Source: Stylophora pistillata (Eukaryota). Taken from it: DNA of 64,000 bases. Position numbers and translations under genes: made by a program. This document shows, one piece after another, positions 2,850-54,062 of the stretch; the stretch's first letter is position 1, and each line of letters starts with the position of its first letter. Location: positions 94,282-158,281 of the forward strand of contig NW_019217890.1 in assembly GCF_002571385.2 (NCBI RefSeq), given 5' to 3'. The notes under the pieces are model-generated. The model ran no database searches and was not told the origin of the DNA. It saw only the letters and a program-made list of their open reading frames with translations.

Positions 2850-5800
2850 ATGTTTTCTTCCTTTATCCTGAGTTTTATCGTAGTGACGTTTTCACGTCAG
2901 ACGACAGCGTCGCATTTTCGCGGTGGTATCATCACGTGGAAACCGGGTGGAAATAATTCGAATAAGGTAAAAAAGAAAATTACGCAGGTGTATTGAGTGA
3001 CCTTCTAGGAACGTAACATGTGTCGGAAAAAAAGATGTCGCCACTTCAGATTAGTTGTCATTACAGCAGCTAAATGGGTTGTACAGTTTGTGGTGAGAAA
3101 AGAATTATATCACAAGGACTCGATTTTGAAGTTTAAGAGCTTAGATCAAAAAAAAGAAACTCGATTATCGAGGAGCTAAATTTACGCTTGCAAGACTGGT
3201 TAGTCTTTTACTCGCCTATTTAGCTTAAATTTTGTGCGACTTATTTGTTTAAAAATCTCGCCAGCCTCGGAGCTCATGGCTTCGGTAACTAGTTTCGCAA
3301 GAATTCGAAGAATGCTGAGCGCATGACTAATTAGATAATAGCGTGCAATCGTAGCGCATTTACTTCGGATGGGCAACCTGTAACAATTTATGGCTGCTTT
3401 ACAGAGTATCAACGATTATGTGGACGGGATAAAAAGCTTGCAGCAACAAAAATCGCTAACTTTCTCTAATAAGCTCGTATGACCAGTCGATTAGATGGTA
3501 AAACACTGACAAACTGATTAACAAATTGTGCATCTAGTAAATGCAAACAGTGTTAAGCGCAATAAGCCATTGCATAGATTGGTTGCATAATCATCTCAGG
3601 ATGAATTAAAATTGCTAACCCTGGTACCTTTAGTGTGGTAATTCTGTTAACAACCGTTAGTACCGTGATTTGAATAGCCAAGGCAATGGCTACGTCGTTC
3701 AGAGCACTTCAAATTCCGGAAGTAACTTTCAGGTTTTCTCGGAAATAACCTACAACTTTAATTGGCTTGAACGTTTACTTAATGTGGAAAGGTATGTTAT
3801 AGCTGTGAAATATACTTATCACACCACACTTTGGTTTCTATGAAACATTATATCATGCAAATGAACCCTATGATAATATTTTATCGCAAAAAGCGACTGG
3901 AAATTTGAATTATTCAAACTTTGTTTTGAACACAATTCTAAATGCTAGAGACTGCAGAACAGTGTAAATTCCTCCCTTTTTTAATGTCTTAGGCGATTTA
4001 ACAAGTGATTTAATCTTATCCTGATTACCTTGAATTATTTTTCCTGAGAGCTCAATTCAAATTATTTTATATATATATATATATATATAAAAAGTTTAAA
4101 AAAATTGCGAGGATGGACAACTTCTGACGTAAAAAATATAAATAATTTAATAAAAAACGTNNNNNNNNNNNNNNNNNNNNNNNNNNNNNNNNNNNNNNNN
4201 NNNNNNNNNNNNNNNNNNNNNNNNNNNNNNNNNNNNNNNNNNNNNNNNNNNNNNNNNNNNNNNNNNNNNNNNNNNNNNNNNNNNNNNNNNNNNNNNNNNN
4301 NNNNNNNNNNNNNNNNNNNNNNNNNNNNNNNNNNNNNNNNNNNNNNNNNNNNNNNNNNNNNNNNNNNNNNNNNNNNNNNNNNNNNNNNNNNNNNNNNNNN
4401 NNNNNNNNNNNNNNNNNNNNNNNNNNNNNNNNNNNNNNNNNNNNNNNNNNNNNNNNNNNNNNNNNNNNNNNNNNNNNNNNNNNNNNNNNNNNNNNNNNNN
4501 NNNNNNNNNNNNNNNNNNNNNNNNNNNNNNNNNNNNNNNNNNNNNNNNNNNNNNNNNNNNNNNNNNNNNNNNNNNNNNNNNNNNNNNNNNNNNNNNNNNN
4601 NNNNNNNNNNNNNNNNNNNNNNNNNNNNNNNNNNNNNNNNNNNNNNNNNNNNNNNNNNNNNNNNNNNNNNNNNNNNNNNNNNNNNNNNNNNNNNNNNNNN
4701 NNNNNNNNNNNNNNNNNNNNNNNNNNNNNNNNNNNNNNNNNNNNNNNNNNNNNNNNNNNNNNNNNNNNNNNNNNNNNNNNNNNNNNNNNNNNNNNNNNNN
4801 NNNNNNNNNNNNNNNNNNNNNNNNNNNNNNNNNNNNNNNNNNNNNNNNNNNNNNNNNNNNNNNNNNNNNNNNNNNNNNNNNNNNGTCTGAGCGGGTTACC
4901 CGTTTTGTGTGTTTTGATGTTTCCAAATGCAACTCCTGGTCTCGCTTCTTTATTTAAAACCCATTTGGCTACTTCGGGAGAAATCTCACCTTTTCCTAGC
5001 CATTTGGAGCACCAACTCTCTACTAATGCCAAATGTTTAGAGGTTGGGTCTGATTGCAAAGGTTCATAATGCAACTGATTGTTAAGCTGACCAAACATTT
5101 TTTTCCTAGTTTATTCTAGTTTGAGCACTCTGGCATGGCTTAGACGATACCACGAATGTTGGATCGTTTGGGGTGACCGTCTCGGTTCTCCTCCATCGTA
5201 GCATCACGGCACTGCACTGATGAGGCCCAGAAGGCCGAAACAGTACTGTCTGCAGTATCATATATATATATATGGTAGCAGTTAGGGGGAAATAGTTATT
5301 CCATATAGATTCAATTTTGTATACCATATATATACCATATATATTGTACCATATATATTGTATACCATATATATATGGTAGCAGTTAGGGGGAAATAGTT
5401 ATGCCATATAGATTCAATTTTGTACTTCGAGTAGCTTTAAACTAAAGATTTTCTTTCTCTTTGATCAAGAATCATTTTTCAAAGCAGAAGCAAGGAAAGC
5501 TCCTCGCTTTGAAAATAGCGAATATCAGGGAGCTAACTTTGCCTTTACGTAATTATTCACTCTAGAATTTTCACTTATTGTGTGGTTGAAAATTTCGCCA
5601 GCCTAACTCTTGGTTTCACAGCCAGTTTCACAAGAATTTAAAGAATGCTGAGTGCATGATTATTGATGCACAGAATCAGTCATTCATAGAGTAGTGCGTG
5701 TATTTTGGAAGAGCTACATCTCAAATTTTCTAAAAGTATTAACAATTCTGTGGACAAAAATTACAATAACAAATTGCATCTTTTTTTCTTAGCCAAGTTC

Positions 5801-8800
5801 CTATGATTACTCGATTAGATGATAAAACACTGGCAAAAGTGTTTGATCATTGTGTACTTAACTAAAGCAAACAAAGCTCGGCGCATTAAGTTATTACGTA
5901 GAATTTGTCACGAAATTTCATATTTTACCATCGCATTCGTCCTAAGATGATACAAATTGCTTACGCTGGTTCCTACAGCTTGTGAATCCGCTAAAAAGTT
6001 TTTTAATAATTAAAAGATTAAAAAAATGCATCGCAACTCATAGTTCTTCAAATTCCGGAAGTAACTTCCGCGTTTTCTCGGAATTTTTGTCGCGAGTTTG
6101 TATTATATCAACGTTTACTTAAGGTAGAGAGGTATCTGAAGGCATTTAAGCATACTCATTACACCTGTCACTTTAGGTTCTATTGACCATTTTATCATGC
6201 AAACGCACCTTAAGTCAATTTTATCGCTAAACGTGACTAGACTTTGAAACATTCAAGCTTTGTGTGTCGTTAAAAAGTTCTGAATGCTTCAGGTAGCGCA
6301 AGTGCGTTAATTCGCTGCCCTTGTCACAACGTTTTAAGACCTTTGTGCAGCGATTTAATTTTACCAGTCTGTGTTCTACTCATACTTGCAACATCGTTCC
6401 TCTGAAAGCTTACTTTGATTTATTTGCGCCATTATCTAGACAGCAGCATGATATATTCAATAGAAACAGATGTTTTTTGTCTTGTTACGAGCGTGACGAA
6501 AAGAGAAAGTTCTGAGTCTTTATGAGGAATCAAATCGCCCACCTTCAGATTCCGTGTTTTGATGCTCCAAAGGTGTGGGGGTCGGCTCTTAGTAGGGACT
6601 TCTTTGTCCCACGCTTATTCCTGAACGAAAAAAAAATATATTTCTTTTTCTTTACCGAGCTCAGATCTATCAGATATTTTAGCATTGTCACAAGTGCTTT
6701 CGGTATTCTTTCAAACGCTGACGCTGTTTTAATGTACTCAGTTTGAATATTCGAAAGTTTACAGACACCGAGATAAACTGCTATATAATTGCCGGCCACT
6801 TTTGCTCAGTATTTGAATTCCCAGTTCATTATATAGCCAACAGCACTCATATTTACATCTCTTACAAATCAAATTCGAAATACGGTGTGGAAAGTATGCG
6901 CGGACTGGAATCTCATCGACTGTAAGTTGATATAAGATTAACAACAGTAAGGGGAGCAATGAAATGGAATAAACATGTCTAGTATTGATTAACGTTTGAA
7001 CTGGTTTCAGGTTCTTTTTAACTTCCGGCTGGGTTTCCGAAGATCGTATTCTAATTCTTATTTCTGTGACAACTCGATGGTTGCAAGCCAAAGTATCGTA
7101 GGAAGGGGAGACAGCTGGAGTGCAAGTCATGACAAAGGATATTATTCAAGTTTTACTGTGGCAGATACTGGATATCATTGCACCGATTTCAGTGTTCAAG
7201 AGGACTGGACACAGGGGGAAAACAGTTTTGAGCATACTTTCCCGGATGAAGGACCCTGGCTGATAAGGTGAGTTAAGCAAAATACACTCTATCTGTCGAC
7301 AATTTCGAGCTATCGTGGTCGTTTAAACAATTCCTTTGTATTGTACCATCCACATTCACTGCTCAATACCCGAACAACAAAAAATTAGGGCAATATGAGA
7401 TGATGAAACAAACAAATCATCAGAAAAGTAGTGACACAGGATCGGGAAACAAGCACGGTGCCCCCATGCTCAATTTCACCTTTTCAATGTCCAATGCATC
7501 GTTATATTTATGAGATAACAAACAGTTTAAAATCTGGATAGTGTTTTTTTTCTTTTAAGGGAATCACCTGTGACGAATTTCAAAATGATAAAGGGTCATC
7601 CCATGGACAGACGAGTCACGCATGGCTTATATCCTATTACCTAGTTATTGGAAAGCCTCTTCGTGGAGCAATTTGAATTTGACTTTAAGTATTTAACTTA
7701 GTGTCAGTGTAAAATGTAAATATCAACTGATAAAATCTAATTTTGTTTTCGCTGTATCCAGTTATTCAAGTTGCTGTTGGATCTCCCTGGCAAATGGAGG
7801 CAATGGTGATTGGTTTCTCTCAACCTCTGTCAACCTGACAAAGCGTCAAGATAACGGAAGAATCAACTCGTCTCCAATCTCAGCGCTATCTCCCATCGTG
7901 CGACACCAGCAAGGCTGTTCGAAGACAATCACTATTCCTGCTGAGGACTCGGACGGTGATAAAGTTCGCTGTCGATGGTCGACTGGTTCTCGAAGAGAAT
8001 GTGGTAGTGTATGTCAGAGATTTCAAAGCGGCAATTTGGATGAAGTAAGTTTAGCTGACCTGTTAAGAACGTTAAGGCAAATTCTTCCTAATTTCTGCCT
8101 TTTAGAATTTTCAACTTTGTCGATCGTAATCCGTGTTTATCATTGCCTCGTTTATCTTACCAATACTGAGAACTTTAATGCTCTGTTGCACTCCTCTTCT
8201 TTTGAGGAGGTATTGCGCGATGCAAAGTTAGATGCTTCCTTGAATTAAATAAAAAAGTTTTGGACGCCCATTGTTCAACTGTAATATTACTACGAATCAA
8301 CCATTTCCTTACAAGAATGCCAATGTATCATCAAATTCAAAATTCCTATGGAATATTTTTCTTTGTTCCACGATCGTGATAACACGAAGAAACATTTTTA
8401 ATTTCTTTGGTAAAAAGGCTTCTGAAATAATAAAAAAAATTATCATTTTTTGGTCGCTTTGCATTTTTCACATATTCTAATCTTACTTTTATTATTTTTT
8501 TTATCCGATCTAAATAGGAGAAATGCACTTTGAGTCTCTATAGCAATGCAGCTCTTGGTTGGCATGCAGTGGCTATTACCTTGGAAGACTACCCAGCTTC
8601 AACGACCAACTTCCAAAGCGCCACCCCATTCAGTCATGTAAGCCTGCAGTTTCTTGTTCACGTGAGTCCATCTTCCGGGCCCTGTAATAGGGCTCCAGTC
8701 CTTATCGGCCAAACCCCAAACGACGGGTCTTGTGAGGAAGTGTCAAATGGTGACACTTTCAAAAGCATTATTGAAGCAAAACATATCGACTCCTCTAGAA

Positions 8801-11800
8801 GGTATGTGTAACTGCTGCACCCTTTCCATGCTAGAATTTGATGGATATGAAAGTGACACTTTCAGTTTAACAATGACTTAGCAAACCTGCTTTTTGTGGG
8901 TCAGTTCCTGGAAATAGCAAATCCTGATAAGTTAGTAAATGAGCTCATCAGAATTCAAAGCATCCTTCTGTTGAAATGTAGCCTATTTTTGTACAACCGA
9001 CGATGGATATCTCAGAGGTCGTTTTTTGACAGCGATGCTCTTACCATGTGTATAGTCAAAGTAATGTTAGTATCTAACGAGCAGGCAATGAAATAGACAA
9101 AGATTATCAACTTACCCAGCACTTTTGAATACGTTTCGGTCTGAGATATGTTCTGGGCAAACTCAAGAAGCATATGCTTTTGAGCTAAGCCAATCAACTT
9201 CCGGCCCGAGATTCACGTACCGTAGTCCTGATCAGTAAGGAAGAATGAGAAAGCTTATTTCCTCTGCAGTGTTCAACATTTTACTCTGTTTTAGCATTGT
9301 TGAGATTATCACTGTCACACCACTTTATATGGTTATTACCGGCCTCCTGAACTACACTGATCAGATCGGGGACACAGTATTCTACAGGAATGCGTCGTGG
9401 AATCCACGATTATCTCAGAAGGGACGACATATCTTTTGTTTCAAGGCAGTTGACAACTACGGGTGGGTCAACAAAGTTATTGTTTTTGTAAATCTATTTT
9501 CTTTTCAGTGTATCATACTTCAAAACGCCTCCATTTAATGAAAAGGTAATTGGATCTTTTTCGTGGTCGCTTTTCCCTAAAGAAAGTAACAGTGCATATT
9601 TGCAGATTAAGCAAGTTCTTACTCACTCCTCGCATGTTTCCTGGATAACAGCTGCCTCAATTTAAATATCCTTAAGACTCTTTGATTTTCTTTGGTATAT
9701 AATTTGATGTATTTTTATCTATGTACAACAATTCACATTTCAGGATTGAAAGCGAGCAGAGATGCATTACCATTATCGTGGGATCAAGTAAGCTTGCATT
9801 TTAAGTGATATTCTGCTGGTTTCTCGGTGTCCGAAATTAGACAATTGATTTCCTACACGAAAAGCTCTTTTGCAGTGCAGGCCTGATTCTTATGTCCCCT
9901 TGTTGTGGTTCTTTTCAGATAACACTCCAAATCCGTTATTGTATTCTCGTGTTCCTGTGGTCCCTCGCTTGTCATGGCCGTGGTGGTTTGGATTTGTGGA
10001 CTTTAACATAACGTTTGACCAACAGGTATTAAATGAAAAGCTGAACTATACACGCAGATTGATTGGTTCTTATTCATGATCTATTTGAGGATAGACGAGC
10101 AGATGACGCTGACAAAAATATCTTATGATCTTATAGTTTAAAACAATAAGCGATCATAGAATATGTCAGAATGCGGTAAGAACAGTGACACATTCTGCTG
10201 TGCTGCATGCACCACTTTTTGGTTCTTACTCAACAAACACATAGTGGCACAGAATCTCTGTTAAGTATTTACAAACTAAAATGAAAACAATGCCTGTACT
10301 TCCATGAAAGCTTCTAATTATAAGTTTAAATACAAGTGGCTAACTAGTTTGTTTCCATAACACAGATCAAAAGACCACGCCATTCCAAGTTTATACGGAT
10401 CGTCTTGGAAGACCACGTAATATACAAACTTGACACACGCTCTTCGAGTGACGTTACCGTTGATAAATTTAGCCTTAGATTCCGCCTGCCGCAAGTTGTT
10501 CTTAGTATGCGGGGAAATTATTCCATTACCATGGACCGTGGCGTTGTGGTGGGCCTCGGGTGTACATCGGATGGTCCGCCTTCACCAGGCATGAGCTCTT
10601 TAAAAGACTGGCCTTTTGATGTTGGAGTTTGTTCTAAGGGCACTTACATGGATCATAATTATCGGTGTAATGGTAAGAACATTGGGTTTTGCATGGAGTA
10701 TTACTGTAATAAATTACAATTTGGAGTAGACTTGCCATTACTGTGCGTAAATATTTAGCCACGAAATTCAAGTTTGTCGTTTGCAATCCTTTTTAGTCTT
10801 ATCCATTTTTAAAAACTCCTGCCCGATATTGAATCAGTGTTGCCTTCCATGGAATAGGGAAATGTTAGATGTTGAGCTCGGTAAAGCGAAAAGGAAAAGG
10901 ATGATTCATTTTGTCACTAGAGCGGGGCAAAGAAATAGTCTGAGATCCCTCGTGAGAAATCGGCCCTTAGAACTTTATGCCTAAAAAACCCCACTTGAGA
11001 TTAGCACTCTGGTGAAGCCGTTTATTCCTCGTGAATATCCAGATACTTAAACCCTTAAGTTACGCTGCTTGGCTGGTCACGCGTTCTCTAACTTGCCAGA
11101 AGAAGTCTCAATTTAGCTCATAGGGTCTTACAAAGTCGCCGTATCACATGTCTGTTACACAGTTAGAAGCCCATAGAAGAGATATTTACTTTCTTTCTCA
11201 CATCTTAGCTATTACTGGAATTAACTCTGTTACACGGGTCGTTACAACCCCCATGTACTAATTTAAGGTGATGGGATAAATGTTAACTTGAGTTGCTTTT
11301 CTTCTAGATGTAAATGAATGCTCCAAGGCGCCGTCTATTCTGAGTCGCAAGAAAAGAAATCCTTGGGGATGGTATTGGCAATATTACACTACTTCTGCGC
11401 AAGGTGCATGTATACTTTACCTCGGGTAACTCTACGTAACTTAGTGCGCAAAAGCGTCCTTTTTTCAGGGAAAACTAACGAGTTTGTCTCATTTTATTTG
11501 ACAGCCATGGTGTCAAGTATGCAAACAAGTAGTTTTTCACCCACACCAGGTAATTCAGCGGTATTCAGAAGTAAATAATTAGGAGTGGTATTTATGGTGT
11601 CTTTCAGCTTGAAGATGTTGCTGTTTCCGCTGCAGTTGTTTTTAGTGGTTTTTCGCGCTCTAAGAGGCAAAATCTTAGAGTGAGACATATGTGACGTTAA
11701 ACTGTACTGATTTCTTTTCTTTAGCTTTCGCAGTTGCTATGACTTCGTCGATTTCTGGTAAGAACAATTTTGATTTTGAATTATAAAGAAAATAAAAAGA

Positions 11801-14800
11801 ATGAAAGAGAATTGTAAAAATAAATGTGTGCAGGGAACATTAGAATACTAAATATTACATTATTGCATAGCGATCATGTCTGATCAGTAAACAACCTAAA
11901 GAAATAAAGGATCAGAATTTCTTTCAATTTTTTTCTTGGAGCGTGAGACGTTAGCATAGTTGTTTGTACTCAAGACTCTAAATTTTCGACAGAGGCCTGG
12001 GTTCCACTCCATGCCCGATCATTGTTACTGTGCTTTCGGGCCAAGGGAACAATGCCATCTTGCTTGGGCGAGACACTTTATTCACGCAATGCCCCTTCCA
12101 ACACTCATTGTGTGCGGGTTGTTGTCAGGGAAACTTCCGAAATACTGTCCATAGGGAGCATTTACGGTAACATCTTTCAGGAGAGATAACACCGCTCTTA
12201 GTAACTTCAACATTCGTAACCAAGAGAGGCTCAACTGGCAGTGAATGGCAAGACCCTTAGAGTAAGAACTTTCTAATCTGATCTATGCTTCCTGTTAACA
12301 GGAGTCTGTTCGCATTACCTCTATCAACAAAATGGTCAGTTTACCAGTCCAAACTACCCTGGCCGTTACTCAAATAACTTGTATTGCACCTGGCTAATTG
12401 AGGCCCCATATGGCTACTACATATATCTACAATTTGGATCATTTCATCTTGAGAGTTGTTGTGACTGGGTTCAAATATTCGATGGTAGCTCAGCATACAG
12501 CTCTAGAATTATAAGCGAAAACGGCTATCAGCAACCCTGGGGAGTGTGTAGCACTGGAAGGTTTCTGTTCGTGCAGTTCACTACAGATTGGAGTTCTACG
12601 TATTCGGGATTTTCAGCAACCTACCAAGCTGTATCACATGGTAAATATATGCTATGTTATTTCTTTGTAAATCTGAATATTTTCATCAACATTACTCATA
12701 TTATTAATTTCTGTAATAAGTCTGACATAGCCTTCCTCCAAGTGAAGCAGTAAAATTGCACGTGTAAACTCTCAGAGTGTTAGCTAGATGGGAATCTTGT
12801 GTGGTACCCGTTTTTTACAATGAGCCATATAAGGTATAAAGAAACAGGTCTGGAAATATGTTAATCTACAACTTGAAGAGTAACTAGAGTGAATTAAGAC
12901 GGGGGACGGACAACTGATGGACCAACTCACTGTTAGTGACATAGTACTTGCATCAGTCTAGAGTAACTCTTAAAGTTCATCCTTTCGTGGGTGCAGCTAT
13001 CAACCCAAGTTTCTTATCTAATATAGATCTTTCAATCTACACTGAAATGCGCACGATGATTTACTAAAAAGAGACACTTATGAAACGACAGAAATTGAAG
13101 CAATATGACGTCCTCCCCAACTTTAGTTTTACGGATACTCCCCACTCTCTCAACATACTGCTAAAAAAAACGATATCCCTCCCTCCTTATCCCCTTTTCC
13201 CCTCCCCCCTCCCCCCACACTCTCGAAGCTGTTTGTATAGTTTCCTTCATCATGTAATACAGTCAGACAAATTGTAATCCCTTGACTCACAGCTTCCGGC
13301 GTCGGCCAAGTTTTTACTTCAGCTGTTAATGGAGCGTGTTATGGTAGCAGTCTCAAGCCATCTGAAAAATTCACAAATTGTGAGTCAATTAAATTAATTT
13401 GAATTTGCTATTTACTCGCATAAGCTATAGGCTTATGCGAGTAAATAGCAAATCTGTTGTTCAGTTTCCCATACAAGTTAGAAAGTTTTCGCTATAGCTA
13501 AGTCTAATTCTTTGTATTTTAGAAATCTTAAGTTCATACAACCACAGTTGTGATGCAAATGTTCCTGTAAAAGATTAATTAAAAATTTTAATGTAAATTT
13601 TTAACAATTCATGCCTGCATTATAAAACATCCAAGGCATCCTATCGTTAATAAGGCTCAGTCGTTATTATATGACCCGTCTGGACCTGCTCGCGCAGTCC
13701 CAGAGAAATCAATAGTGATAGCTGACGAATGTAGGACCGGATGGGTTGGCGTCAGCCGGTCCGGAAAAAGCCGTCCGGCCCTTCTGCCCTCATGTCGCTT
13801 TGCTGCTAAAACTTAAAGGAAAAAAGAAATGAGAAAAAAACAGTCGAGTTTTTCGGGGAATTGCGAGTTTCTTGTTTTGACCTGAAAAAGTAAAGGAATA
13901 GTTTTAATTGCAGAATTGTTACTTTTGCTTGTGTGACTGCGTATGCCCGTCTATCGCGTCGTATTTAGGTTGACACGTTCATACGATAAAATGCTTATTG
14001 ACTGAGTTTGGTCGGGCCGGACAGGAAAATGTTTCGCTCTCGGACATGAGGCACGAACCTCGCTGTGCTCGGTCCGTACGTCATGACATCGAGCCCTGAA
14101 TATTTTCCCGTTCAGCCCTCCTACTCAGTCAATAACTACATTTTCTACAATCTTAATAAATTATTATACAATTAAGGAAAACGATTCCTTCCATTCATGC
14201 TAGCTTAAATTGCAATTGCAATAAACATTTCCATCCTAGCTGTTTCAATTTCATTCTTGTACTTAAAGGACAGAGCTGGTAAAATTTTATTTGTTCCTTT
14301 TTATTTTTCATAGTGGTATCCCCGACGAGATCTTCTACGCATATTCCATTGACATCCTCAGTTATTGGTAAATTATGGAAAAATTTCATCCTCTTTGATT
14401 ATTGAAACTAATGGTAAATAGAGCACCATAGTCCAAGACTGCGTGAGCGTGTGCGTGTGCGTGCTCGGCGCGTGTGCGTACATGTCCGTGTGTGTAAGCG
14501 CGTGAGTATGTAAAACAATGGGCAAGTTTAGTTGGCCTGAAGTTACTATAGTAGCAGGAAGCGGACAAGTTCAATAAAGATAACTCATATTAGGAACTTA
14601 TCGAGTTGTTACGTGTCTATCGTTATGCCAGTGATTGTTTAAATTACACAGTCCACGTAATTTTTATCATTTTCATTGTCATCTTCCTTACATCTATCAG
14701 AGTCTGTCAATAGTAACTTTTATTACTTTGTAATTCTATTTTCTCTTTTCTTCAATTTTTGCCAAAACTGTATATTTGACCTTCAAGTCTAAACCTGAGG

Positions 14801-17800
14801 TACTCTGCAGCTGGAAGACAAACTCCTTCTCTCCTTTTTGTTACCAGGTGCCTGTTCATATTACCTTTACCAACGAAATGGCCGATTTACAAGTCCAGGC
14901 CATCCCAACCGTTACTCAAATAGGCAGCATTGTACCTGGTTAATCGAGGTTCCTTATGGCCACTTCATATATCTACAATTTGGATCATTTCATCTTGAGG
15001 GTTGTTGTGACTGGGTTCAAATATTCGATGGGAGCTCAGCATACAGCTCTAGAATTACAAGTAAAAACGGCTATCAGCAACCTTGGGGAGTGTGTAGTAG
15101 TGGAAGGTTTCTGTTCGTGCAATTCACTACTGACGGGAGTGTTACGTATTCAGGCTTTTCAGCAACCTACCAAGCTGTACCACATGGTAAAGAAATATGT
15201 GTGTCTGCCTATCCCTTCATATTTTTTTTTTTTTTTTTTTGGAATAAATTAATTTGTATTCACTTGATTAACTTTGATGAATAAGAAAAGAAAAATGTAT
15301 GAAAGAAAACATTACGTGCTACCCAAACGTGCATTTGTGTCACCCATCTTTCAAATTGTACTGGATAATGTGTTGTAATTCGTCACCTCAAACGACTGCA
15401 AGATAGAGACATGGCCGACTGTCTGACTAAAGTTTTTGTAGAAATTTTTATTCATTGCGCGTTTCATTGAAGAAAAACACATCGGGCACCAATTCACAGG
15501 CTGAATGAAAGAATATCAAAGTTAACGCAAGCTTTAGCCTCGAGTTACTTTAAGAGACATTTTTACAGCGGACCCCACCCTACTGTTTAAAAATTCGTGA
15601 CCTTTCTCATTATCATGTCACTCTTTGACAGAGTACGATTTGTATGATGCACGATCCTCGCAATAGAGAGCGCTATTAATGTAATAGCGAAAATCAGACC
15701 TGAAAAAAAAAAAAACATGATTTGTCACAAATTACAAATTTTTTCCTTGAACTCAGCCTCCGGTGTCCACCAAGTCTATGCTTCAAGTGCTGTTGGATCG
15801 TGTTATGGAATTAGTTCGATACCCTACTTACAACAAACACGTGGTTAGTACGTTCAATAACTACTTGTAATATGCTGCAGTTTGATGAAATATATATTAG
15901 TCTTTAACATAAGAACTAAGCATTTAATCAGATATACTGCGCGAGAACGAGACTAAGGAGTACGATCCTACCTTACAGAATCTTTTTCGTAGCACATTTC
16001 AACTCCTTACTCAAATTTTACATATTACCGATTTAGTGTCCCTTTTAAGACTGTTTGACCACTTTAAACAGTCTTCATGTCGTGATAAAAGTGTAATCAA
16101 TACATATTTTAATTTCCTAAACGTAGGATTTTGTAGTTTTTATCACGTTATTCGTAAACGGAAATGTGAACGGAAACCACTGCACCTTGTATCGCATTCG
16201 TTGGAAACCCCGACGATTTTCGCGCTGACACTTACATAGGGAATACAAACTGATAGTGTGGGTGCTTGATCACAGCCAAACGGGAGAAAAATATCTCTGC
16301 AACTTTAGTTTTCCTTTTCTTTTGATGAAAAACTACAACCAAATTCGTCGATGAAATGAACTTCAGCGCAGAGCTTAATTGTCAATAACCTCAGATTAAA
16401 GTATGTAGTATATTGTAACATGTAAGAACAGTTACTAAACATGATGTGTTCGTTTAGATTCCTTAGCGATAACTCCGACGAGGTCATCTGCCTATATTCC
16501 ATGGACAGTTTCTGCTAATGGTATAGTTGTTTATACTCACCCAGTATTGTTGGATACATTGTAACAAATGGTATTCGGTATTCACGATTTAAAAATGTCT
16601 GTTGCTTTAAATTTTTGGCAGTATTTTTTGTTAACAGGAGCATTTTGCAAGAGTATCTTAAGAACGATTATAGCAACGTATTAACAAGAAAGCTTTGAAC
16701 ACCTTCGACCTATATGAGGATTCGTGGAAGCTGAATTTTTCTCAAAAAGGAGAACTTAATAAAAATACCGAGTTTGAACGTATCTAAGAAGCCTCAAGGG
16801 TCAAACAAACTCCGCTCGTTTTTAAGGCCTATTTAGGTTATGGATTTTTACTCTCCTAACATCCCTCTCTGTTCCCACGTACGCTCCAGTTTTCATTCGC
16901 GTTTAAACTGAAAAGAGTCATCTCTGCAAAAGGCCTATTTAGGTTATGGATTTTTACTCTCCTAACATCCCTCTTTGTTCCCACGTACGCTCCAGTTTTC
17001 ATTCGCGTTTAAACTGAAAAGAGTTATCTCTGCAAAACAAGGACCAACCGAAGATGGAAAGTATTTTTCCTTTTATCGTCATTAATTTTATTCCAGAGTG
17101 CACGAGTCACTACTTTTTGGAAGATTTTGGAAGATCAGTTAACTATGTTGGGAACAATGTCACATGCGACAGAGGTCTTTCCCATGGTTGGTACAGATTT
17201 CGTGGTGCAGCAGGAACTCAAATGCCCTCCTCCTGTGTGGGAATGAATCGTTGTGGAACGCATGCCCCAGGGTGGTTAAATGGTGCGCATCCCACCGTAG
17301 CTGACGGGATTGTCCGTGTCTCAGTGTGCTTCCACTGGAATTGGCGATGTTGTAGATGGTCTACGACCATCCGCGTGCGCAACTGCGGTGGGTTTTATGT
17401 ATACGAACTAGGATCACCGCCGTATTGTCATTTGCGTTACTGCGGAGGTAGGAAATTATCAGTTACTGAATACCTAAGTCACTAATTCCTAGTTTTTAAT
17501 GTTCGTGTTTACATAGCTGGTTAAATTCTGATGTGTTTACGGTAAGGTTTCCAACCATTTTTTTACAACTACTCACCCCAACTAATAACATTTGGTTTTG
17601 GAACTTGTGATGACATTATTTTGAGGTGTTAGACCTCGCGAAGGATGATATGAAAATATCTTAATTGTCCCTAATTAAGACAAAATAGAAAATGACTGAG
17701 AAACTAGAAAGACAGGAATAAAATAAAATGTATACCAATTCAACATCAAACCAAACTAAGCTGATCACCAAGAAAGAAAATTTAGATATTGCAAGGTGGA

Positions 17801-18050
17801 GATTCGCTGGTTTCGTATTTTCTGAACGTTTTCAGCAAGTACCGTACAGTCAACTCCAGTGATGCGTAAATCTCTTGGCTTGAACACATCGTCATACGCA
17901 AGAGCAAGTAAGTGTCTACATTGTTTAATTAAATGAACTATGAATTCATTACAATGACTGGAACTCAACGCGATCTGTCCCTAATTGAGACAAAATAGAA
18001 AATGACTGAGAAACTAGAAAGATAGGAATAAAATATTTTATTAAAAACTA

Positions 18051-18105
<55 letters not shown>

Positions 18106-18218
18106 CAGCCAATATACCATAATCTACAAATATGGCAAGCGTACGTTTCAGCTTAAGATTAAAAGGGAGCTAAAAATTTAATAAAACTTAATAATTTAAT
18201 TTAACGTTTTTAATAAAA

Positions 18219-18255
<37 letters not shown>

Positions 18256-18256
18256 T

Positions 18257-18330
<74 letters not shown>

Positions 18331-21300
18331 TTAAATGTATACCAATTTAACATCAAACCAAACTAAGCTGACCACCAAGAAAGAACATTTAGATATTGCA
18401 GAGATGGCGATTCGCTAGCTTCGTATTTTCTGAACGTTTTTAGCAAGTACCGTGCAGTCAACTCCAGTGATGAGTATTTCTCCTGGCTTGAACACATCGT
18501 CATACGCAGGAGCAAGTGAGTGTCTACATTGTTTAATTAAATGAACTATGAATTCATTACAATGATTGGAACTCAACGCGATCTGTTTGCTGACGATTAC
18601 ATCATGGTCGGTGTTTCTTTTTCTTTCCATTTTGTAAAAAAGAAAGCAGCAAACAAAAATAATTAATAGATGAGGAGGAGAACGTAGAAAAGTCCTGATT
18701 GATCAGTTTCTATAGACTCAGAAAAATGGAAACACTAAAAGTGATAGAACGACAAACTTACCAGAATCAATAGAAGGGTTTAATTCAATTGTTTTCGATC
18801 TTCTTTCTCCGTTCTACTTCACAGACTCATTGTACATAAAATCAACGGTTGCTATGCTAACGTCTGTCGCGTCCAGTACACCATTTGTACTACACCTACC
18901 CGCCAATTGCCAGCATGATTGTGTTAACAACTGGGGAAGCTATTACTGTACTTGCCGTCAAGGATACAGGTTGGAGGCGGATGGGAAAACATGTCAGGGT
19001 AAGTTTACACATCACCGACGGACTGCTTTCATATCTTGCAATGTCCACCGATAGCATACTGGTCTTAATTATGCCAAATAGAATGAAACGAAACCACAGG
19101 TATAAAAATCATCGTCATCACGTGAACAATAGTTGTAACGTACGTAACAGTACACCGAGAGACTTTAATTTCGCATACATTTTATCATAAGGCATCAAAA
19201 ACGGTGAGGGAAAGTGCGAAGAGTGACATTGTTTTTAGTTCCTTTGATCGCTTATTCGCTTACCTTGATGTCATCGTAACGTCGATTAGGTTGCTTTTAT
19301 TTGATGAAAGGATACATTTGATTAACCTTACAAAGGAAACAATTTCTGTGTTGCGCCAATACACGAAATACTTTGGCAAACCGCGATTTTTAAGTGGCGC
19401 GAAATTTAAACACACTGATAATATCTTGAAGTTAAAATTTTCGTCATAAAAAGTTAAAAATATGACGTTCATAGGATTTTTCGTGCGGAAATGCTCTCCT
19501 ACGGGAACACGTTTAACTGTAGTCACGTCTAAAAATTAAAAGGGGATTCTTGGGATTTTCCACAATGCACCGTTTTTGATTAACTCCTTTACATTTAGTT
19601 CTGTAATTTATAACAACTTTATTTGCATACAGTTGGAAGATCAAAAAAGTATAAATGCAAATAGGGTGCCAGCAGGGAAGAACTTAATCTTCATGTAAAG
19701 TTGACCCCCCAATAGAAATAAAAATTCTATATACATACTTAAAATATATACACTATGTTGTCATCGATAAAACTATAGCAATCTAAAATGTATAGATATA
19801 ACCAAATAATTAATTTAAGCCTGAGTACGAAACAGAATCCTTAATGAGCATGTTATATAGACGTCTCTTAAAGTTGCTAACACTGACTGCTTCAACGATA
19901 TCTTTCGGCAAAGAGTTCCACTCATCAATGTACCTGTGCCAAAATGAGTACTTAAGAATATATGTTCGTGCATAGGGTTTCCAAATTTTATATCTGTTGG
20001 TACATCTTGTGCGGCAAGAAGAAAACTTTAAATAATCATCTAGACGTACAACACAAAAGCCCTTGATATACTTAAAAAGTTGTGTCAGACTTAAAAGACT
20101 TCGACGGGTTTTGAGATCCATCCATCTTAGTTTCGACAATCTTTCGTCGTAAGTAATGTCCTTGCTAAGAATCCTCCTAGAGGCACTACGTTGAATCCGC
20201 TCTAGTTTATCTGACAATTGTTGTTGATGGGGATTCTAAGCAGGGCACGCATATTCAATTATCGGACGATATATACCCTATTTTTATAGCTTCAGAGCAT
20301 CTGCCAAAGGTGCGTTTAAGTAAGCTTTTGCAGCAACTGATAGAACATGGGATTTCCATGAAAGATCGCATGAAAGGGTTACACCAAGATGCTTGTGCGA
20401 GGAAACTTTCGTCAATGGAACCGAGTTAATGTTATAAGAACAGGTAGTTGCTCCCTCGATCTTGTAATTCTCATGAATTCACATTTGTCAATGTTTAAAT
20501 TCAGAGACCATGAACTGCACCAGCCATTCATTTGATTTAAGCCTTGTTGAACAGGAGTAGAAACAATTAATGTCAATAGAATCAGAGTTATACAGTAGCG
20601 TATCATCAGCCCCAAAATAGAGCCTTGAGGCACACCTGAGATGACATTTCCCCAATCGGAGAATGCATGCACCATCAATGACAACTCTCTACTTTCGATC
20701 ATAAAGGAAATCACTCAACCAGAGGAGAATATTTTCTTTGATACCAAAAAGTTGTAGCTTTGCCAAAAGAAGTTTGTGGGAAACAGAGTCGGCAAAGGCT
20801 TTAGCAAAGTCCAAGAAGACTACATCAATTTCTTTCTTCCAGAGACGTTTATCAGAGTTCAATCAGTTAGTTACCGTGCTTCTTCCAAATCTCACAAACC
20901 TTTTATGTCTTTATCAACCGACAGATATCAACGAATGCTTAACCCAAAATGGCGGCTGCACCCATGAGTGTGTGAACATCCCAGGAGGCCACTACTGCAA
21001 ATGCCCCGAGGGCGTTACAATGGGCTTTGATAACAAGACGTGTCATGGTATGTAAATTTTTGTAAAAGGAAAATTGCGCACAGATTCCTCTCATAGCTAT
21101 CTATAAGATTCTCTACATTGCTGTACTGCATCTTTATACATTACCATTTGGTACAGAAAAGTTTTCAGACAGAGTTCTATTAACTTTGTTGAAACTAACG
21201 GGGAGATAAGTATTTTTGAATAATTAAAACAGTGAAATGGCTTTCTCTGGCAGAAACTTCAATTGTGAATTAATATTTTTCGTTCTTTTCAGAACCTGGT

Positions 21301-23758
21301 ATTACAGTGAAATGCACTGATGAAGCCATGTTTATTTTTCTGGAGAGAAAATCTTTCCAGGGCTTTGATCCAAACAAGCTCACTCTGCTTTACCCGTCAT
21401 GCCGTGCCTCTTACAACGATTCCCACATATCCTTGCGAACGAGTCTCAACGACTGTGGAACCACACATAACGAAAGTGAGGACGCGATAACTTTCCACAA
21501 CAAAGTGCAGAGTGTCCAATCCTACTCCGGCAACATCATAACTCGGGAACAAAACGTGTCAATTCCTTTCTACTGCAGTTATGGACGTAAAGCCCAGCTT
21601 CGAAATCCAAGTTTCCGAATCTGGAAGAACTATTTCACAGCTTCGGAAGGTAAACTCTTACCAGGAAATGCTCATTTGATTTAATTTGTTTTAGGATAAG
21701 ACATTGACTCGATTATTAAGAGTTATCGCTCAGTTCAGTAATTTAAGGGAGTAATATTTAAGGAGCGGCATTCATTGAATCAGTCTTTGAAGAAAAACCC
21801 TTGGCTCGTCTCTTTGTTAACGAGATGGTACTCCTTTAGCCGTCACCTGACATTGTGGTGGAGTTTGACGACCTTTATTGCTTTCTGGGATCATCGTATA
21901 GTGTACTTACGAAGACAAAAAGGAAAAAAGTACTGAATGAGCTTTCCGCTTTTAGTTTTCGCTCAAAATTAATTGGATTTTCTGTCAATCTTTTTATTGT
22001 TCCCAACAACCACCAGAGTCTGGTGAGACTTGACATTTACAGATCTCATAGAAAGACCGCAAATTTTAATTTATTTTCATAGGTGGATATGGTAACTTCA
22101 CATTCACGATGGATCTATTCAAGACGGGCAGATATCTTACAACGTACAGCTATAATGACTATCCAATCACGGTCCATCTTCGGGATCGCTTGTTTCTTCA
22201 GTTAGCGGTCCGTTCATACCAGTCTAACTTGGTTCTCTTTGTCGACACCTGCAAGGCGACTCCCTCTCCTGATCCGTACTCAGTTCCTCAGTATATCTTC
22301 TTACAAAGAGGGTAAATATGTCGTGTTTTGTGAAACGCTTATCGAACAATGTTTCCTATAAATATTCGCTTTTTATGCAGTTTTCCCTTGAACGAACGAG
22401 TTGAACTACATGAGGCTAACTCAGTGTGTAAAGAATTTTTATCAGTACAAAATAGAATCAAATGTTTTTGAAGTCCATTTTCTTTTTGTTTTTAAACGAT
22501 TTTATTGGGCATATCAGATAAATATTTGAACAAGGCAAAAGTACAATAATACAATAACAAATAGAAAACAGAAGAGAAACTGAGATAAAACTGCACCCAA
22601 AAGGAAAGGCGCGAATGGGACGTAAAGTCCCATGCGAGGCGCCGCCCATTATGAATTAAAAAACACTATAAAATAGAAAATCACAATAATACAGAATAAA
22701 TAAATAAATCATTTCAACTGCCGAACAAAAAGTGCTAATTGGTGGAATGTTCGAATATTCGAGTACATAGTAATCAGCGGGAAATCAAGCCACCGAAAAA
22801 ATCTGTAAATTAAAATTTTTTGTCCGTGTAAGTTTTTCAAGGTGCAAAACTTTGGTTTCTAGTGGTTTACGTATCATCCCATCTACAAATTCATAATTAT
22901 AATTCTCTTTGCTTGGCTGCAGATGTAAGCTTGATGCTACCCTCAATTATTCGTACTCCATCAGCTCCAAACAGCGTTTTAGCATTCAAGCGTTTCGTTT
23001 TATTGAAGAACATCCAGTGGTACATCTTCACTGTGAAGTTCTGGCTTGCCACCGCAACACTGCCCGCTCCCGCTGCCTCCAGGGATGCTCCCGCTATCGT
23101 GGACGGAGAGACGAAGTTCCTGGTTCTGAGAGTACTCAGATGTACAAAATTTCGTCTGGACCAATCAAATTCCAAAAAGGGTCGAGCGGAACGAATAGAG
23201 AAAAAAAGAGCGAAGGTGAGCGAGGAAGTGGAGAGTCGTGGGTAACGATTTACTGAATAATTATGTGGAAAGTTTAGATGTCGATAGATACTTCAAACAT
23301 GTACTTGAATCGCTATCACGATAGTTAGATTGACCATGGAATCAGCTCGAAAGAATTGCCACCCTTTCTCAACTCGATACAGGTTGCCAAACACCACACA
23401 AACGTTAATTGACCGTATCAGATCTTTAAATAATTTACTGAAGCAACTGTGAAGTTACTAAACCCGAGTCACTTTTTTTTTTGTCATCCTTTTAGCTGAA
23501 ACTCAAACCAATATGGGGATCATTACAGTAGCGGCGGCATCCGGCGGAATTCTTCTCCTCCTGGTAATCATTTTGGTAATTGTCATCATTCGAATCAAGA
23601 AGCGTCTGAAGGGAGCTTTCGCAGATCGCAACAAAGTCTATGCCATGGAACAGTGTAGCAAATACGTCAAGCAAGAGAACAACAACTTGGGCTTCACTCA
23701 GGATGACGAACTGAACGAGATGGGAGACAAGTCGTTTATTATGAAACCGCTTGCTTAG
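2850..23758 (+). CDS. Large type I membrane CUB/D8C/EGF/zona pellucida (ZP) domain protein, uromodulin/OIT3/CUZD1-like, ~1508 aa, 24 exons
   Basis: Exons: 2850-2966 (signal peptide MFSSFILSFIVVTFSRQTTA then SHFRGGIITWKP), 7011-7267, 7762-8044, 8518-8801, 9295-9462, 9744-9787, 9919-10025, 10366-10672, 11308-11403 (DVNEC..RKKR), 11505-11549, 11725-11757, 12302-12640 (CUB), 13293-13379, 14848-15186 (CUB), 15757-15843, 17097-17447 (D8C: GWYRF..CGTHAPGWL..VRNCGGFYVY..LRYC), 17836-17907, 18444-18515, 18825-18998 (EGF C2-C6), 20925-21047 (cbEGF), 21293-21649 (ZP-N), 22083-22311 and 22923-23215 (ZP-C, RGRR cleavage site), 23496-23758 (TM plus tail). All introns are GT-AG and the phases join into one 4527-nt ORF. 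The small exons are the least certain. Confidence 0.88.
4067..5105 (-). mobile_element. Penelope-like retroelement fragment (mostly in an assembly gap) ending at a (TA)n microsatellite
   Basis: Minus strand 4885-5098 gives YEPLQSDPTSK..ARPGVAFGNIKTHKTGNPLR, resembling the Penelope RT N-terminal motif YGLPKIHK..PLRPI. The other side of the gap ends in (TA)n at 4068-4089. Confidence 0.7.
5211..5256 (+). ncRNA. Minimal type I hammerhead ribozyme (Penelope pLTR/retrozyme-type)
   Basis: ACTGCA-CTGATGA-GGCC-CAGAA-GGCC-GAA-ACAG-TA-CTGT-C-TGCAGT: 6-bp stem I, intact CUGAUGA and GAAA core, 4-bp stem II, palindromic stem III, GUC triplet. Predicted cleavage after C5250. Followed by (TA)n. Confidence 0.85.
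13403..13453. repeat. Perfect 23-bp inverted repeat with 5-nt loop
   Basis: ATTTGCTATTTACTCGCATAAGC-TATAG-GCTTATGCGAGTAAATAGCAAAT. Confidence 0.95.
13640..14140. mobile_element. GC-rich non-autonomous element ending in a ~140-bp imperfect palindrome
   Basis: TTATTGACTGAGT (13995) and ACTCAGTCAATAA (to 14135) enclose further inverted segments. The left boundary is approximate. Confidence 0.5.
16824..17035 (+). repeat. Tandem duplication, 2 x 106 bp
   Basis: AAGGCCTATTTAGGTTATGG...ATCTCTGCAA occurs twice with about 2 differences, just upstream of the D8C exon. Confidence 0.9.
17666..18585 (+). repeat. Recent tandem duplication of a ~310-bp unit containing a 72-nt Ser/Thr-rich mini-exon
   Basis: Units start TGTCCCTAATT(A/G)AGACAAAATAGAAAATG at ~17666 and ~17975 and are near-identical, introns included. 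The second unit carries a 297-bp insertion. Confidence 0.9.
18036..18332. mobile_element. Palindromic non-autonomous element inserted without target-site duplication
   Basis: Empty site in the upstream duplicate is GGAATAAAATA|AAATGTATACC. The filled site has the 297-bp insert at the bar. The insert has inverted pair TTTTATTAAAAAC/GTTTTTAATAAAA, then a ~115-bp hairpin AACAATTATTCC...GGAATAATTGTT. Confidence 0.85.
19580..20900 (-). mobile_element. Degenerate 5'-truncated CR1/L2-clade LINE in an intron of the ZP gene
   Basis: Minus-strand RT motifs GRSTVTN, IDVVFLDFAKAF, SGVPQGSILG, WSLNLNIDKC and the C-terminal LERIQRSASR..YDERL..SFWHRYIDEWNSLP. Internal deletions and stops; 3' boundary approximate. 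Confidence 0.85.
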
Positions 23759-53489: not shown

Positions 53490-54062
53490 TATCGCCACGG
53501 ATGTACAAATAAATATAAATTTTCAACTCGACGCTCAGCTCAAGCGAGGGAAAAATTAACGCCCGGGCGTCCCCCGGGAAGAGTACTGAGGTATTCAGCG
53601 GACACGCGCCTAAGGCTAAATGTTCTATGTAAGTGTCACAGAAAACTCAACGATGGAATTGAAAAATGACGTAAAATGTTTCCCGCGCGAAATGTAACTA
53701 TCACTAGTGAGACTATTGATGACTCACGTCCTGTAAAGTCCCACAACAGCCTGCTTTACGGGAAGATTCGTGCACAGTGATGTAGTTTATCTTTGTCCAA
53801 TTATTGAAAAAAGAAAAGGACAACAAGCATGAGAGAATGGAAAATGAATAATGGGATAATAAGAGATGAGATAAAATAAAATATGAGTAGTGTAGATGGG
53901 TCCAGATGCCGAATCTGCAACCCCTCTCATGGGAGGGGGATAAGATACGTGGGCATATAGAGAGGGGGAAGTAAATGCAATCATACAAAAGAAATAAGAA
54001 TATATATAAAAAAAATGCTTTGCGTTTTATTAGAATTTTTTCAATTATTTTCAATGTAAAAA

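What the first reader, a model, noticed from the sequence alone, without database searches (positions are those of the whole stretch)
11308..18998. Split calcium-binding EGF domain that clasps a furin site and a ~530-aa modular cassette
Seen in sequence: exon 11308-11403 opens with the cbEGF signature DVNEC but has no further Cys. It continues SKAPSILSRKKR-NPWGWYWQYY. Ten exons later, exon 18825-18998 ends in [32 protein letters not shown], which is exactly C2-C6 of a cbEGF with no C1. The next exon is a normal 6-Cys cbEGF for comparison. In between lie Ser/Thr linkers, CUB, CUB and D8C (~530 aa). Established: EGF disulfides pair C1-C3, C2-C4, C5-C6, and R-X-K/R-R is a furin site. Inference: the EGF folds from two distant halves with the cassette looped out of its C1-C2 loop. 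Furin cleavage at RKKR would give a branched, disulfide-linked two-chain protein with two arms on a ZP stalk, one arm starting with a new Trp/Tyr-rich N-terminus. A second site (RGRR) after ZP-C would allow release or polymerisation. I do not know of this architecture being described.
Basis: partly seen in the sequence, partly recalled or inferred. Interest (0 to 1): 0.88.

Follow-up and report, generated by a model that had tools for sequence, protein, structure and literature searches.

The report
Coral ZP protein with interrupted EGF domain
A coral (Stylophora pistillata) uromodulin-like filament protein has one calcium-binding EGF domain whose first cysteine lies 569 residues before the other five. 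A conserved furin site and a variable set of CUB and D10C domains sit in between, and this layout is shared by a whole family of stony-coral genes, but nobody has yet shown that the two halves join.

Summary
The window lies in Stylophora pistillata, and the gene is LOC111327813 (XP_022787831.1, 1547 aa).

- **Exon chain.** RNA contigs from two independent polyA studies join the N-terminal exon to the DVNEC exon. They continue through the Ser/Thr linkers, CUB1 and CUB2 to the D10C exon, with GT..AG at every joint. Both database models give the same chain as far as the 5-Cys EGF, the cbEGF, the ZP module and the TM segment.
- **Family trait.** About 35 scleractinian proteins in two deep clades share the split. 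It reads Cys hairpin, D[IV][DN]EC, an insert of 20-1004 aa, then a C1-less EGF. Insert cysteine counts are nearly always even.
- **Paralog.** A tandem paralog about 10 kb upstream has the same two exons with only a 91-aa linker between them.
- **Outgroup.** Amphioxus relatives carry intact cbEGFs at this position.
- **Cysteine parity.** There are 17 Cys before the insert, 22 inside it and 5 after it. Both halves of the Ca2+ site are conserved. Both points favour closure across the insert.
- **Furin site.** An RxKR (once KKR) site lies 5-9 residues after C1 in every member whose insert holds folded domains.
- **Structure prediction.** It gives only weak support.

Disulfide pairing and cleavage are untested. 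I rate this a new variant of a known kind, because laminin L4 domains are inserted into LE domains. Interest is moderate to high.

The parts
2850..10672 (+). Exons 1-8: signal peptide (MFSSFILSF...), then the roughly 500-aa N-terminal beta-sandwich region that begins SHFRGG. It has a weak SIBA-E_N match and 14 conserved Cys. Exon blocks: 2850-2969, 7014-7266, 7760-8045, 8518-8800, 9293-9463, 9745-9787, 9921-10026, 10366-10672.
   Evidence: Mapping of XP_022787831.1 (P0112) onto the window; Pfam; Cys columns; AF2 secondary structure of the paralog
10627..10668 (+). Two-Cys hairpin VCSKGTYMDHNYRC (C-x2-G-x-Y-x6-C). It resembles the C5-C6 end of an EGF and lies directly before DVNEC.
   Evidence: conserved in all coral family members
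11308..11403 (+). Phase 1-1 exon holding the N-terminal half of the split cbEGF, (D)VNEC. The C1 codon is at 11319-11321.
   Evidence: RNA joints 10672>11308 and 11403>11505 in runs X2 and X7; raw reads of X21 also show 10672>11308
11346..11357 (+). RKKR, a furin-type site 9 residues after C1
   Evidence: conserved across the family
11358..11387 (+). Trp/Tyr-rich segment NPWGWYWQYY, which would be the new N-terminus after cleavage
   Evidence: family equivalents are YAWWWP, NIWYWPY and SYWWWQY
11505..11757 (+). Two Ser/Thr linker mini-exons (11505-11549 and 11725-11757)
   Evidence: RNA joints
12302..12640 (+). CUB domain 1 (5 Cys)
   Evidence: Pfam CUB 3e-22; RNA joints
13293..14367 (+). Mini-exons 13293-13379 (one Cys) and 14314-14367 (Ser/Thr)
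14848..15186 (+). CUB domain 2 (5 Cys), a tandem duplicate of the CUB1 unit
   Evidence: Pfam CUB 3e-22; RNA joints
15757..16520 (+). Mini-exons 15757-15843 (one Cys) and 16458-16520 (Ser/Thr)
   Evidence: The loose end at 16520 reads into the D10C exon.
17097..17447 (+). D8C/D10C domain (10 Cys)
   Evidence: Pfam D8C_UMOD 6e-23; the loose-end consensus in X2 and X7 equals the exon start
17836..18515 (+). Two duplicated Ser/Thr mini-exons (17836-17907 and 18444-18515)
   Evidence: annotation only, not covered by the reads laid
18825..18998 (+). Phase 1-1 exon: a Ser/Thr linker, the PFVLHLP motif and the C-terminal half of the split cbEGF (C2-C6 at 18899-18994)
20925..21047 (+). Complete 6-Cys cbEGF, in the position of uromodulin EGF IV
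21292..23214 (+). ZP module: ZP-N (21292-21651) and ZP-C (22085-22312 plus 22924-23214). The consensus furin site RGRR is at 23098-23109 and the external hydrophobic patch SSGPIKF at 23152-23172.
   Evidence: Pfam; the top Foldseek hit of the paralog model is uromodulin 4WRN
23495..23755 (+). Last exon: transmembrane helix (23516-23590) and cytoplasmic tail
   Evidence: helix in the AF2 model of the paralog

Best explanation
The gene encodes a type I membrane, uromodulin-like ZP filament protein of a stony coral. The first cbEGF after the N-terminal beta-sandwich region carries a phase-1 intron in its C1-C2 loop. Symmetrical phase 1-1 exons have been shuffled into that intron: mucin-like Ser/Thr linkers, two CUB units and a D10C. 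The most likely working model has four steps. (1) The hairpin-DVNEC segment docks on the 5-Cys EGF body through the canonical C1-C3 disulfide and a shared Ca2+ site, so the 569-aa cassette is a giant loop clasped at its base. (2) A proprotein convertase cuts at RKKR, 9 residues after C1, and opens the loop. (3) The product is two disulfide-linked chains: the N-terminal arm, and the cassette-EGF-EGF-ZP chain that starts with a Trp/Tyr-rich end. (4) Cleavage at RGRR after ZP-C releases the ectodomain for ZP polymerisation, as in uromodulin. Shown here: the exon chain, the domains, the family-wide layout and the conservation. Inferred: disulfide closure, both cleavages and polymerisation.
For: Exon chain:
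- polyA RNA contigs of two studies (X2, X7) show GT..AG joints 10672>11308>...>16520, with a loose end reading into 17097. Seven of these joints also appear in raw reads of X21 and/or X24; the three linker joints 11403>11505, 11549>11725 and 11757>12302 do not. One 645-nt contig links the N-terminal exon, the DVNEC exon, the linkers and CUB1.
- PFX27261.1 and XP_022787831.1 hold the whole chain.
- Two cDNA-like contigs from other runs encode an uninterrupted 1387-aa ortholog with the same order.

Family layout:
- The tandem paralog XP_022787832.1 has VDEC..RKKR, a 91-aa linker and then PANCQHDC...
- About 35 scleractinian proteins have inserts of 20-1004 aa holding 0-6 CUB and 0-2 D10C domains. 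Cys counts are even in all but two.
- Amphioxus homologs have intact cbEGFs directly after the N-terminal region.

Closure:
- Cys parity is 17 / 22 / 5. The N-terminal region is self-contained with 14 conserved Cys.
- D523, E526, C527, C623, N625 and G628 are invariant or nearly so. The [10 protein letters not shown] hydroxylation/Ca motif is kept.

Furin site:
- It is present in both deep clades and in every member whose insert holds folded domains.
- It lies in a stretch with pLDDT below 30 in the paralog model.

Docking:
- Complex prediction on residues 359-478 and 1020-1108 of P0047 with 2 Ca scored 0.39; the best of 3 controls scored 0.01. The verdict was weak support. The mark was reached by 51 of 78 solved complexes and 2 of 108 mismatched pairs. 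At 0.60 or under it was reached by only 5 of those 78 and by all 4 mismatches that passed. The runs agree in at least 73% of contacts, and partner pLDDT is at least 80.

ZP module:
- The top structural hits are uromodulin structures (4WRN, E = 4e-16).
Against: - No disulfide map, no protein-level data and no model coordinates are available.
- The complex score is in the range where passes are more often wrong than right without a good prior.
- AF2 of the short-loop paralog P0082 gave pLDDT below 50 for the hairpin, DIDEC and the loop. AF2 of P0054 gave only about 66 for the hairpin and VDEC.
- Two gene models have odd Cys counts in the insert (P0053, P0056).
- Seven family members lack the dibasic site, so cleavage is not essential to the fold.
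- Junctions 17447>17836>18444>18825>20925 rest on annotation and on the ortholog transcript, not on reads laid here.
Confidence: 0.55

Rival explanations
1. The architecture is real, but the two odd cysteines do not pair within the molecule. Cys527 and one Cys of the 5-Cys EGF stay free or form disulfides between subunits that cross-link the ZP filaments. The DVNEC motif is then a relic of a degraded EGF.
For: The structure predictions are weak or uninformative about docking. ZP matrices are known to use intermolecular disulfides (general knowledge; mentioned in PMC4890752).
Against: Both halves of the Ca2+ site (D-x-N-E and C-x-N-x4-Y-x-C) are conserved across two deep clades. A relic should decay. 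The halves always co-occur. Controls in the complex test scored 0.01 against 0.39.
Confidence: 0.17
2. RKKR is a maturation site that releases the roughly 515-aa N-terminal region as a separate soluble protein or propeptide. There is no covalent clasp.
For: The conserved RxKR site lies in a disordered stretch right after the N-terminal region. One Logan fragment (P0006) has two dibasic sites that bracket an acidic peptide, which looks like a propeptide.
Against: Release would leave an unpaired Cys on each product (parity 17 and 5). The site always lies after C1, never before the DVNEC motif.
Confidence: 0.15
3. The long insert is mostly an effect of alternative splicing. The main product skips the cassette, or uses inner splice sites, so that the EGF is effectively contiguous.
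For: All cassette exons are phase 1-1, so any of them can be skipped in frame. RefSeq lists many isoforms with different CUB and D10C counts in Acropora and Pocillopora. One GenBank model of the paralog skips the VDEC and EGF exons (P0003).
Against: Only inclusion joints were seen in four RNA runs over 10550-16549. RNA runs hold 0.23-0.31 of the sampled words, against an exonic share of about 0.23. Even the shortest family inserts are 20-22 aa, far longer than a normal C1-C2 loop.
Confidence: 0.08
4. Artefact: two separate genes, or a mis-called exon.
For: None found.
Against: RNA contigs bridge the N-terminal exon, the DVNEC exon and CUB1. Two independent annotations and an ortholog cDNA agree.
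Confidence: 0.02

Closest known systems
Laminin L4 (domain IV) nested in an LE (laminin-type EGF-like) domain
   Same: A folded domain is inserted between two cysteines of one EGF-like domain, whose halves are far apart in sequence yet form one disulfide-bonded unit. L4 sits between Cys3 and Cys4 of an 8-Cys LE (PMC5338690).
   Different: Here the host is a calcium-binding EGF. The insertion point is the C1-C2 loop. The insert is a variable, alternatively composed multi-domain cassette with mucin-like linkers, and a conserved furin site sits at its start. Closure is not shown here.
Uromodulin / GP2 (EGF, D10C, EGF IV, ZP, consensus furin-type cleavage site, membrane anchor)
   Same: D8C/D10C, an EGF directly before ZP-N, a ZP-N/ZP-C module, a basic cleavage site followed by a hydrophobic patch, and a membrane anchor. 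The best structural matches are UMOD structures.
   Different: UMOD has contiguous EGFs, a GPI anchor instead of a TM helix, no CUB domains, no SibA-like N-terminal region and no internal furin site in an EGF loop. Sequence identity is only about 26% over the ZP region.
Complement C1r-type EGF (Pfam cEGF) with an unusually long, flexible C1-C2 loop
   Same: The C1-C2 loop is the EGF site that tolerates extra length. Pfam cEGF matches the 5-Cys half. That the C1r loop is long is from my own recollection of the literature, not checked here.
   Different: The C1r loop is about a dozen residues with no domains and no cleavage site. Here the loop is 20-1004 residues.
CUZD1 / DMBT1 / OIT3 (the names given by automatic annotation)
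   Same: They share CUB, EGF, D8C and ZP building blocks.
   Different: None has the SibA-like N-terminal region or a split EGF. The names are best-hit labels, not orthology.

Membership tests
Calcium-binding EGF (PF07645) | N-terminal D/N-x-D/N-E/Q-x-C1 motif | tested here: met
   DVNEC at the start of exon 11308-11403. D523, E526 and C527 are nearly invariant in 39 sequences.
Calcium-binding EGF (PF07645) | C3-x-D/N-x4-F/Y-x-C4 (Ca ligand and hydroxylation motif) and C5-x-C... G-Y | tested here: met
   [16 protein letters not shown] in exon 18825-18998. EGF_CA matches profile positions 10-43.
Calcium-binding EGF (PF07645) | Six cysteines in one contiguous domain of about 40 aa | tested here: not met
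   C1 and C2 are 569 aa and eleven exons apart. The shortest family loop is 20 aa.
Calcium-binding EGF (PF07645) | Disulfides C1-C3, C2-C4 and C5-C6 | not testable with these tools
   Only indirect evidence: Cys parity 17 / 22 / 5, and the complex prediction of 0.39 against 0.01 for the best of 3 controls, a weak pass.
Polymerising ZP-module proteins (uromodulin type) | ZP-N and ZP-C domains | tested here: met
   PF23344 5e-15 and PF00100 4e-18 / 1e-8. Foldseek top hit 4WRN, E = 4e-16, for the paralog model.
Polymerising ZP-module proteins (uromodulin type) | Basic cleavage site after ZP-C, followed by an external hydrophobic patch and a membrane anchor | tested here: met
   RGRR 23098-23109, SSGPIKF 23152-23172 and the TM helix 23516-23590.
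Polymerising ZP-module proteins (uromodulin type) | Forms filaments | not testable with these tools
   No experimental data.
Furin / proprotein convertase substrate | R-X-K/R-R motif in an exposed, flexible segment | tested here: met
   RKKR at 11346-11357. The equivalent stretch of the paralog has pLDDT below 30. It is conserved in two deep clades.
Furin / proprotein convertase substrate | Cleavage observed | not testable with these tools
   No proteomic data were searched or available.
Nested domain insertion in an EGF-like domain (laminin LE/L4 type) | Insert lies between cysteines of a single EGF-like domain whose halves reunite | tested here: inconclusive
   The position between C1 and C2 is shown. 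Reunion is inferred only.

The most novel reading that the evidence does not exclude
A conserved 'clasp and cut' device. A cbEGF closes around a variable, alternatively spliced cargo of CUB and D10C domains. A convertase then opens the loop, so each ZP filament subunit carries two disulfide-tethered arms. The newly exposed Trp/Tyr-rich N-terminus acts as a functional element, for example an anchor for membrane, glycan or mineral. The site is kept in every member whose insert holds folded domains, which would mean that cleavage is needed to deploy them.
Probability: 0.3. Interest if true: 0.75.

Novelty: new variant of a known kind. Interest (0 to 1): 0.6.

Why it matters
Stony corals have expanded uromodulin-like ZP proteins. 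These are found in skeletal matrix proteomes (PMC4890752) and are mostly expressed in the oral epidermis (PMC13581030), and their function is unknown. If the clasp model holds, three things follow:

- The C1-C2 loop of a cbEGF can host up to about 1000 residues of shuffled domains.
- This would be a natural example of exon shuffling into a phase-1 intron inside a domain rather than between domains.
- It would give a simple route to branched, two-armed filament subunits.

The model also yields concrete predictions that are cheap to test in existing coral mucus and skeleton proteomes.

Tried and rejected
- **Two genes or a mis-called exon.** Rejected by the RNA joints and by two annotations.
- **An overlooked exon completing either EGF half.** No further EGF-like ORF lies in 11404-18824. 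RNA depth between 11404 and 12301 shows only the two linker exons. The stretch 18516-18824 was not covered by the reads laid.
- **AF2 of the short-loop paralog P0082.** pLDDT was below 50 over the hairpin, DIDEC and the loop. The model is uninformative, and that gene model is truncated.
- **AF2 of P0054.** It gives no coordinates or contacts, so the C1-C3 distance could not be read.
- **Foldseek.** It only recovered the ZP/uromodulin and Ig-like array similarities.
- **Literature.** Searches for the accessions and for 'Oncoprotein-induced transcript 3' with Stylophora found nothing. A search for the long loop of the C1r EGF found no usable paper.
- **Earlier findings.** The search of earlier findings returned nothing.
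- **tRNA scan.** ARAGORN found no tRNA in the highly expressed intronic repeat.
- **Joined model.** Exons were searched one by one by reference, and the full-length work used database proteins returned by the tools.


Full report
**What is in the sequence.** The window is Stylophora pistillata contig C107:94282-158281. A 26-exon gene lies on the + strand from 2850 to 23755.

- Exon 11308-11403 reads (D)VNECSKAPSILSRKKRNPWGWYWQYYTTSAQ and has one Cys.
- Exon 18825-18998 ends in [32 protein letters not shown] and has five Cys.
- Pfam EGF_CA matches the second exon only over profile positions 10-43 of 43, so the DxxEC/C1 part is absent there.
- The next exon is a full 6-Cys cbEGF. ZP-N, ZP-C and a TM helix follow.
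- Between the two halves lie CUB, CUB and D8C (ten Cys, so D10C), with Ser/Thr-rich mini-exons around them.
- Every exon from 11308 to 18998 is phase 1-1 with AG/GT borders. They map one after another onto residues 524-1126 of XP_022787831.1.

There are eleven intervening exons, because 11725-11757 was missed. The insert is 569 aa. The upstream exon ends at 10672 in a two-Cys hairpin, CSKGTYMDHNYRC, that runs straight into DVNEC. That hairpin looks like the C5-C6 end of a preceding EGF.

**Is it one transcript?** RNA runs of this coral hold 0.23-0.31 of the sampled words of 11250-19050, and the exonic share of that stretch is about 0.23. I laid four RNA runs on 10550-16549.

- Contigs of two polyA studies (X2, X7) show these GT..AG joints: 10672>11308, 11403>11505, 11549>11725, 11757>12302, 12640>13293, 13379>14314, 14367>14848, 15186>15757 and 15843>16458. 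Seven of them also appear in raw reads of X21 and/or X24. The three linker joints (11403>11505, 11549>11725, 11757>12302) rest on the contigs alone.
- A loose end at 16520 has a consensus equal to the start of the D10C exon at 17097.
- One 645-nt contig links the N-terminal exon, the DVNEC exon, the linkers and CUB1.
- No skipping joints appeared.

The joints from 17447 to 20925 were outside the 6-kb limit. They rest on the two independent database models, PFX27261.1 and XP_022787831.1. They also rest on two cDNA-like contigs from other runs, which encode an uninterrupted 1387-aa ortholog in the same order. Exons were searched by reference, and full-length work used proteins returned by the tools.

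**It is a family trait.**

- A tandem paralog lies about 10 kb upstream (XP_022787832.1). It has a 96-nt exon, VDECSTPLSILSRKKRSHYWYY.... About 1.5 kb later it has a 174-nt exon...[14 protein letters not shown].... Only two Ser/Thr mini-exons lie between them, giving a 91-aa insert with no Cys.
- Eight more distant paralogs in this genome also carry DI[DN]EC and the 5-Cys EGF on separate exons.
- A search of 1.8 billion representatives, followed by a full-length search, gave about 35 scleractinian proteins from Acropora, Montipora, Porites, Orbicella, Oculina, Desmophyllum and Pocillopora. All have the hairpin, D[IV][DN]EC, an insert of 20-1004 aa, [LP]-x-x-C-x-Q-x-C-x-N-T-x-G-S-Y-x-C-x-C, a cbEGF, the ZP module and a TM helix.
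- The inserts hold 0-6 CUB and 0-2 D10C domains. They differ between RefSeq isoforms of one gene, so the cassette is shuffled and probably alternatively spliced.
- Amphioxus homologs have the same N-terminal region followed directly by intact cbEGFs. An intact EGF is therefore the likely ancestral state.

**Do the halves belong together?** Four indirect lines say yes.

1. They always co-occur.
2. Cysteine parity fits. The N-terminal region has 14 conserved Cys and is self-contained in amphioxus. With the hairpin (2) and DVNEC (1), 17 Cys lie before the insert. The insert has 22, and inserts are even in all but two family models. The EGF body has 5.
3. Both halves of the composite Ca2+ site are conserved (D523, E526, C527; C623, N625, G628).
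4. The hairpin supplies the aromatic residue that normally packs on the next cbEGF. This last point is inference from general knowledge of tandem cbEGFs.

Direct modelling was weak. Complex prediction used residues 359-478 and 1020-1108 of P0047 with 2 Ca.

- It scored 0.39, against 0.01 for the best of 3 controls. The verdict was weak support.
- The mark was reached by 51 of 78 solved complexes and 2 of 108 mismatched pairs.
- At 0.60 or under it was reached by only 5 of those 78 and by all 4 mismatches that passed.
- The runs agree in at least 73% of contacts, and partner pLDDT is at least 80.

AF2 of the paralog gave pLDDT of about 66 for the hairpin and VDEC, below 30 for the insert and about 79 for the EGF body. 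AF2 of a truncated short-loop paralog was uninformative. No coordinates are returned, so the C1-C3 distance could not be measured.

**The furin site.** RKKR (11346-11357) lies 9 residues after C1, in a stretch predicted to be disordered.

- An RxKR (once KKR) site, followed by a Trp/Tyr-rich run, is present in both deep clades of the family.
- It is present in every member whose insert holds CUB or D10C.
- It is missing only in members with short, domain-free inserts of 20-89 aa.

This points to selection for opening the loop when it carries folded cargo, but cleavage itself is untested. RGRR after ZP-C, followed by SSGPIKF and a TM helix, is the usual ZP release arrangement (PMC4890752). The best structural matches of the C-terminal part are uromodulin structures.

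**Comparison and verdict.** Nested insertion into an EGF-like domain is known. Laminin L4 sits between Cys3 and Cys4 of an LE domain (PMC5338690). Three features are new here:

- the host domain (a cbEGF) and the insertion site (the C1-C2 loop);
- the variable multi-domain cargo;
- the conserved convertase site.

Coral ZP and uromodulin-like proteins are mentioned in skeletal proteome and expression papers, but I found no description of this feature. I rate the architecture as certain, closure at about 0.65-0.7, cleavage at about 0.6, and the whole model at 0.55. It is a new variant of a known kind, of moderate to high interest.

Noticed in passing
G000:C107:75800-90800 (loci L014, L015): A tandem paralog (XP_022787832.1, 1065 aa) has the same N-terminal region, split EGF and RKKR but no CUB or D10C cassette. 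A second GenBank model of it (PFX27260.1) skips the VDEC, 5-Cys EGF and cbEGF exons.
   Followed up: yes
window 12302-16520 and 17836-18515: There are internal tandem duplications inside the cassette. The unit CUB + 29-aa one-Cys mini-exon + Ser/Thr mini-exon occurs twice, and the 24-aa exon STVQSTPVM... occurs twice. Each CUB has an extra Cys (SCCDW / GCCDW) that may pair with the single Cys of the following mini-exon.
   Followed up: partly
window 15640-15715 (intron): A short repeat has enormous RNA depth in all four runs (word depth about 24,000 in X2). Its loose ends look like a tRNA T-arm (GGGATTCGAACC), so it is probably a SINE or another dispersed expressed repeat. ARAGORN calls no tRNA there.
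   Followed up: partly
window 54798-55718 (-): A sulfotransferase ORF (Sulfotransfer_3, 2e-44) carries a tyrosylprotein-sulfotransferase-like motif. Its proximity to a gene with a Tyr-rich post-furin segment is probably coincidental.
   Followed up: no
window 52812-53522 (-); 31500-39000 (-): A DHHC palmitoyltransferase exon lies at 52812-53522. A multi-exon gene with DAO and GCV_T domains (sarcosine/dimethylglycine dehydrogenase-like) lies at 31500-39000.
   Followed up: no
window 46638-47744 (-) and 48160-49587 (-): Two long open frames (369 and 476 aa) have no Pfam match.
   Followed up: no
protein P0006 (Logan fragment, 391 aa, source unknown): A relative has two dibasic sites after DVNEC (RYRR ... 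RQKR) that bracket an acidic 20-aa peptide, before WISYWQ and a D8C domain. This suggests excision of a small peptide in some lineages.
   Followed up: no
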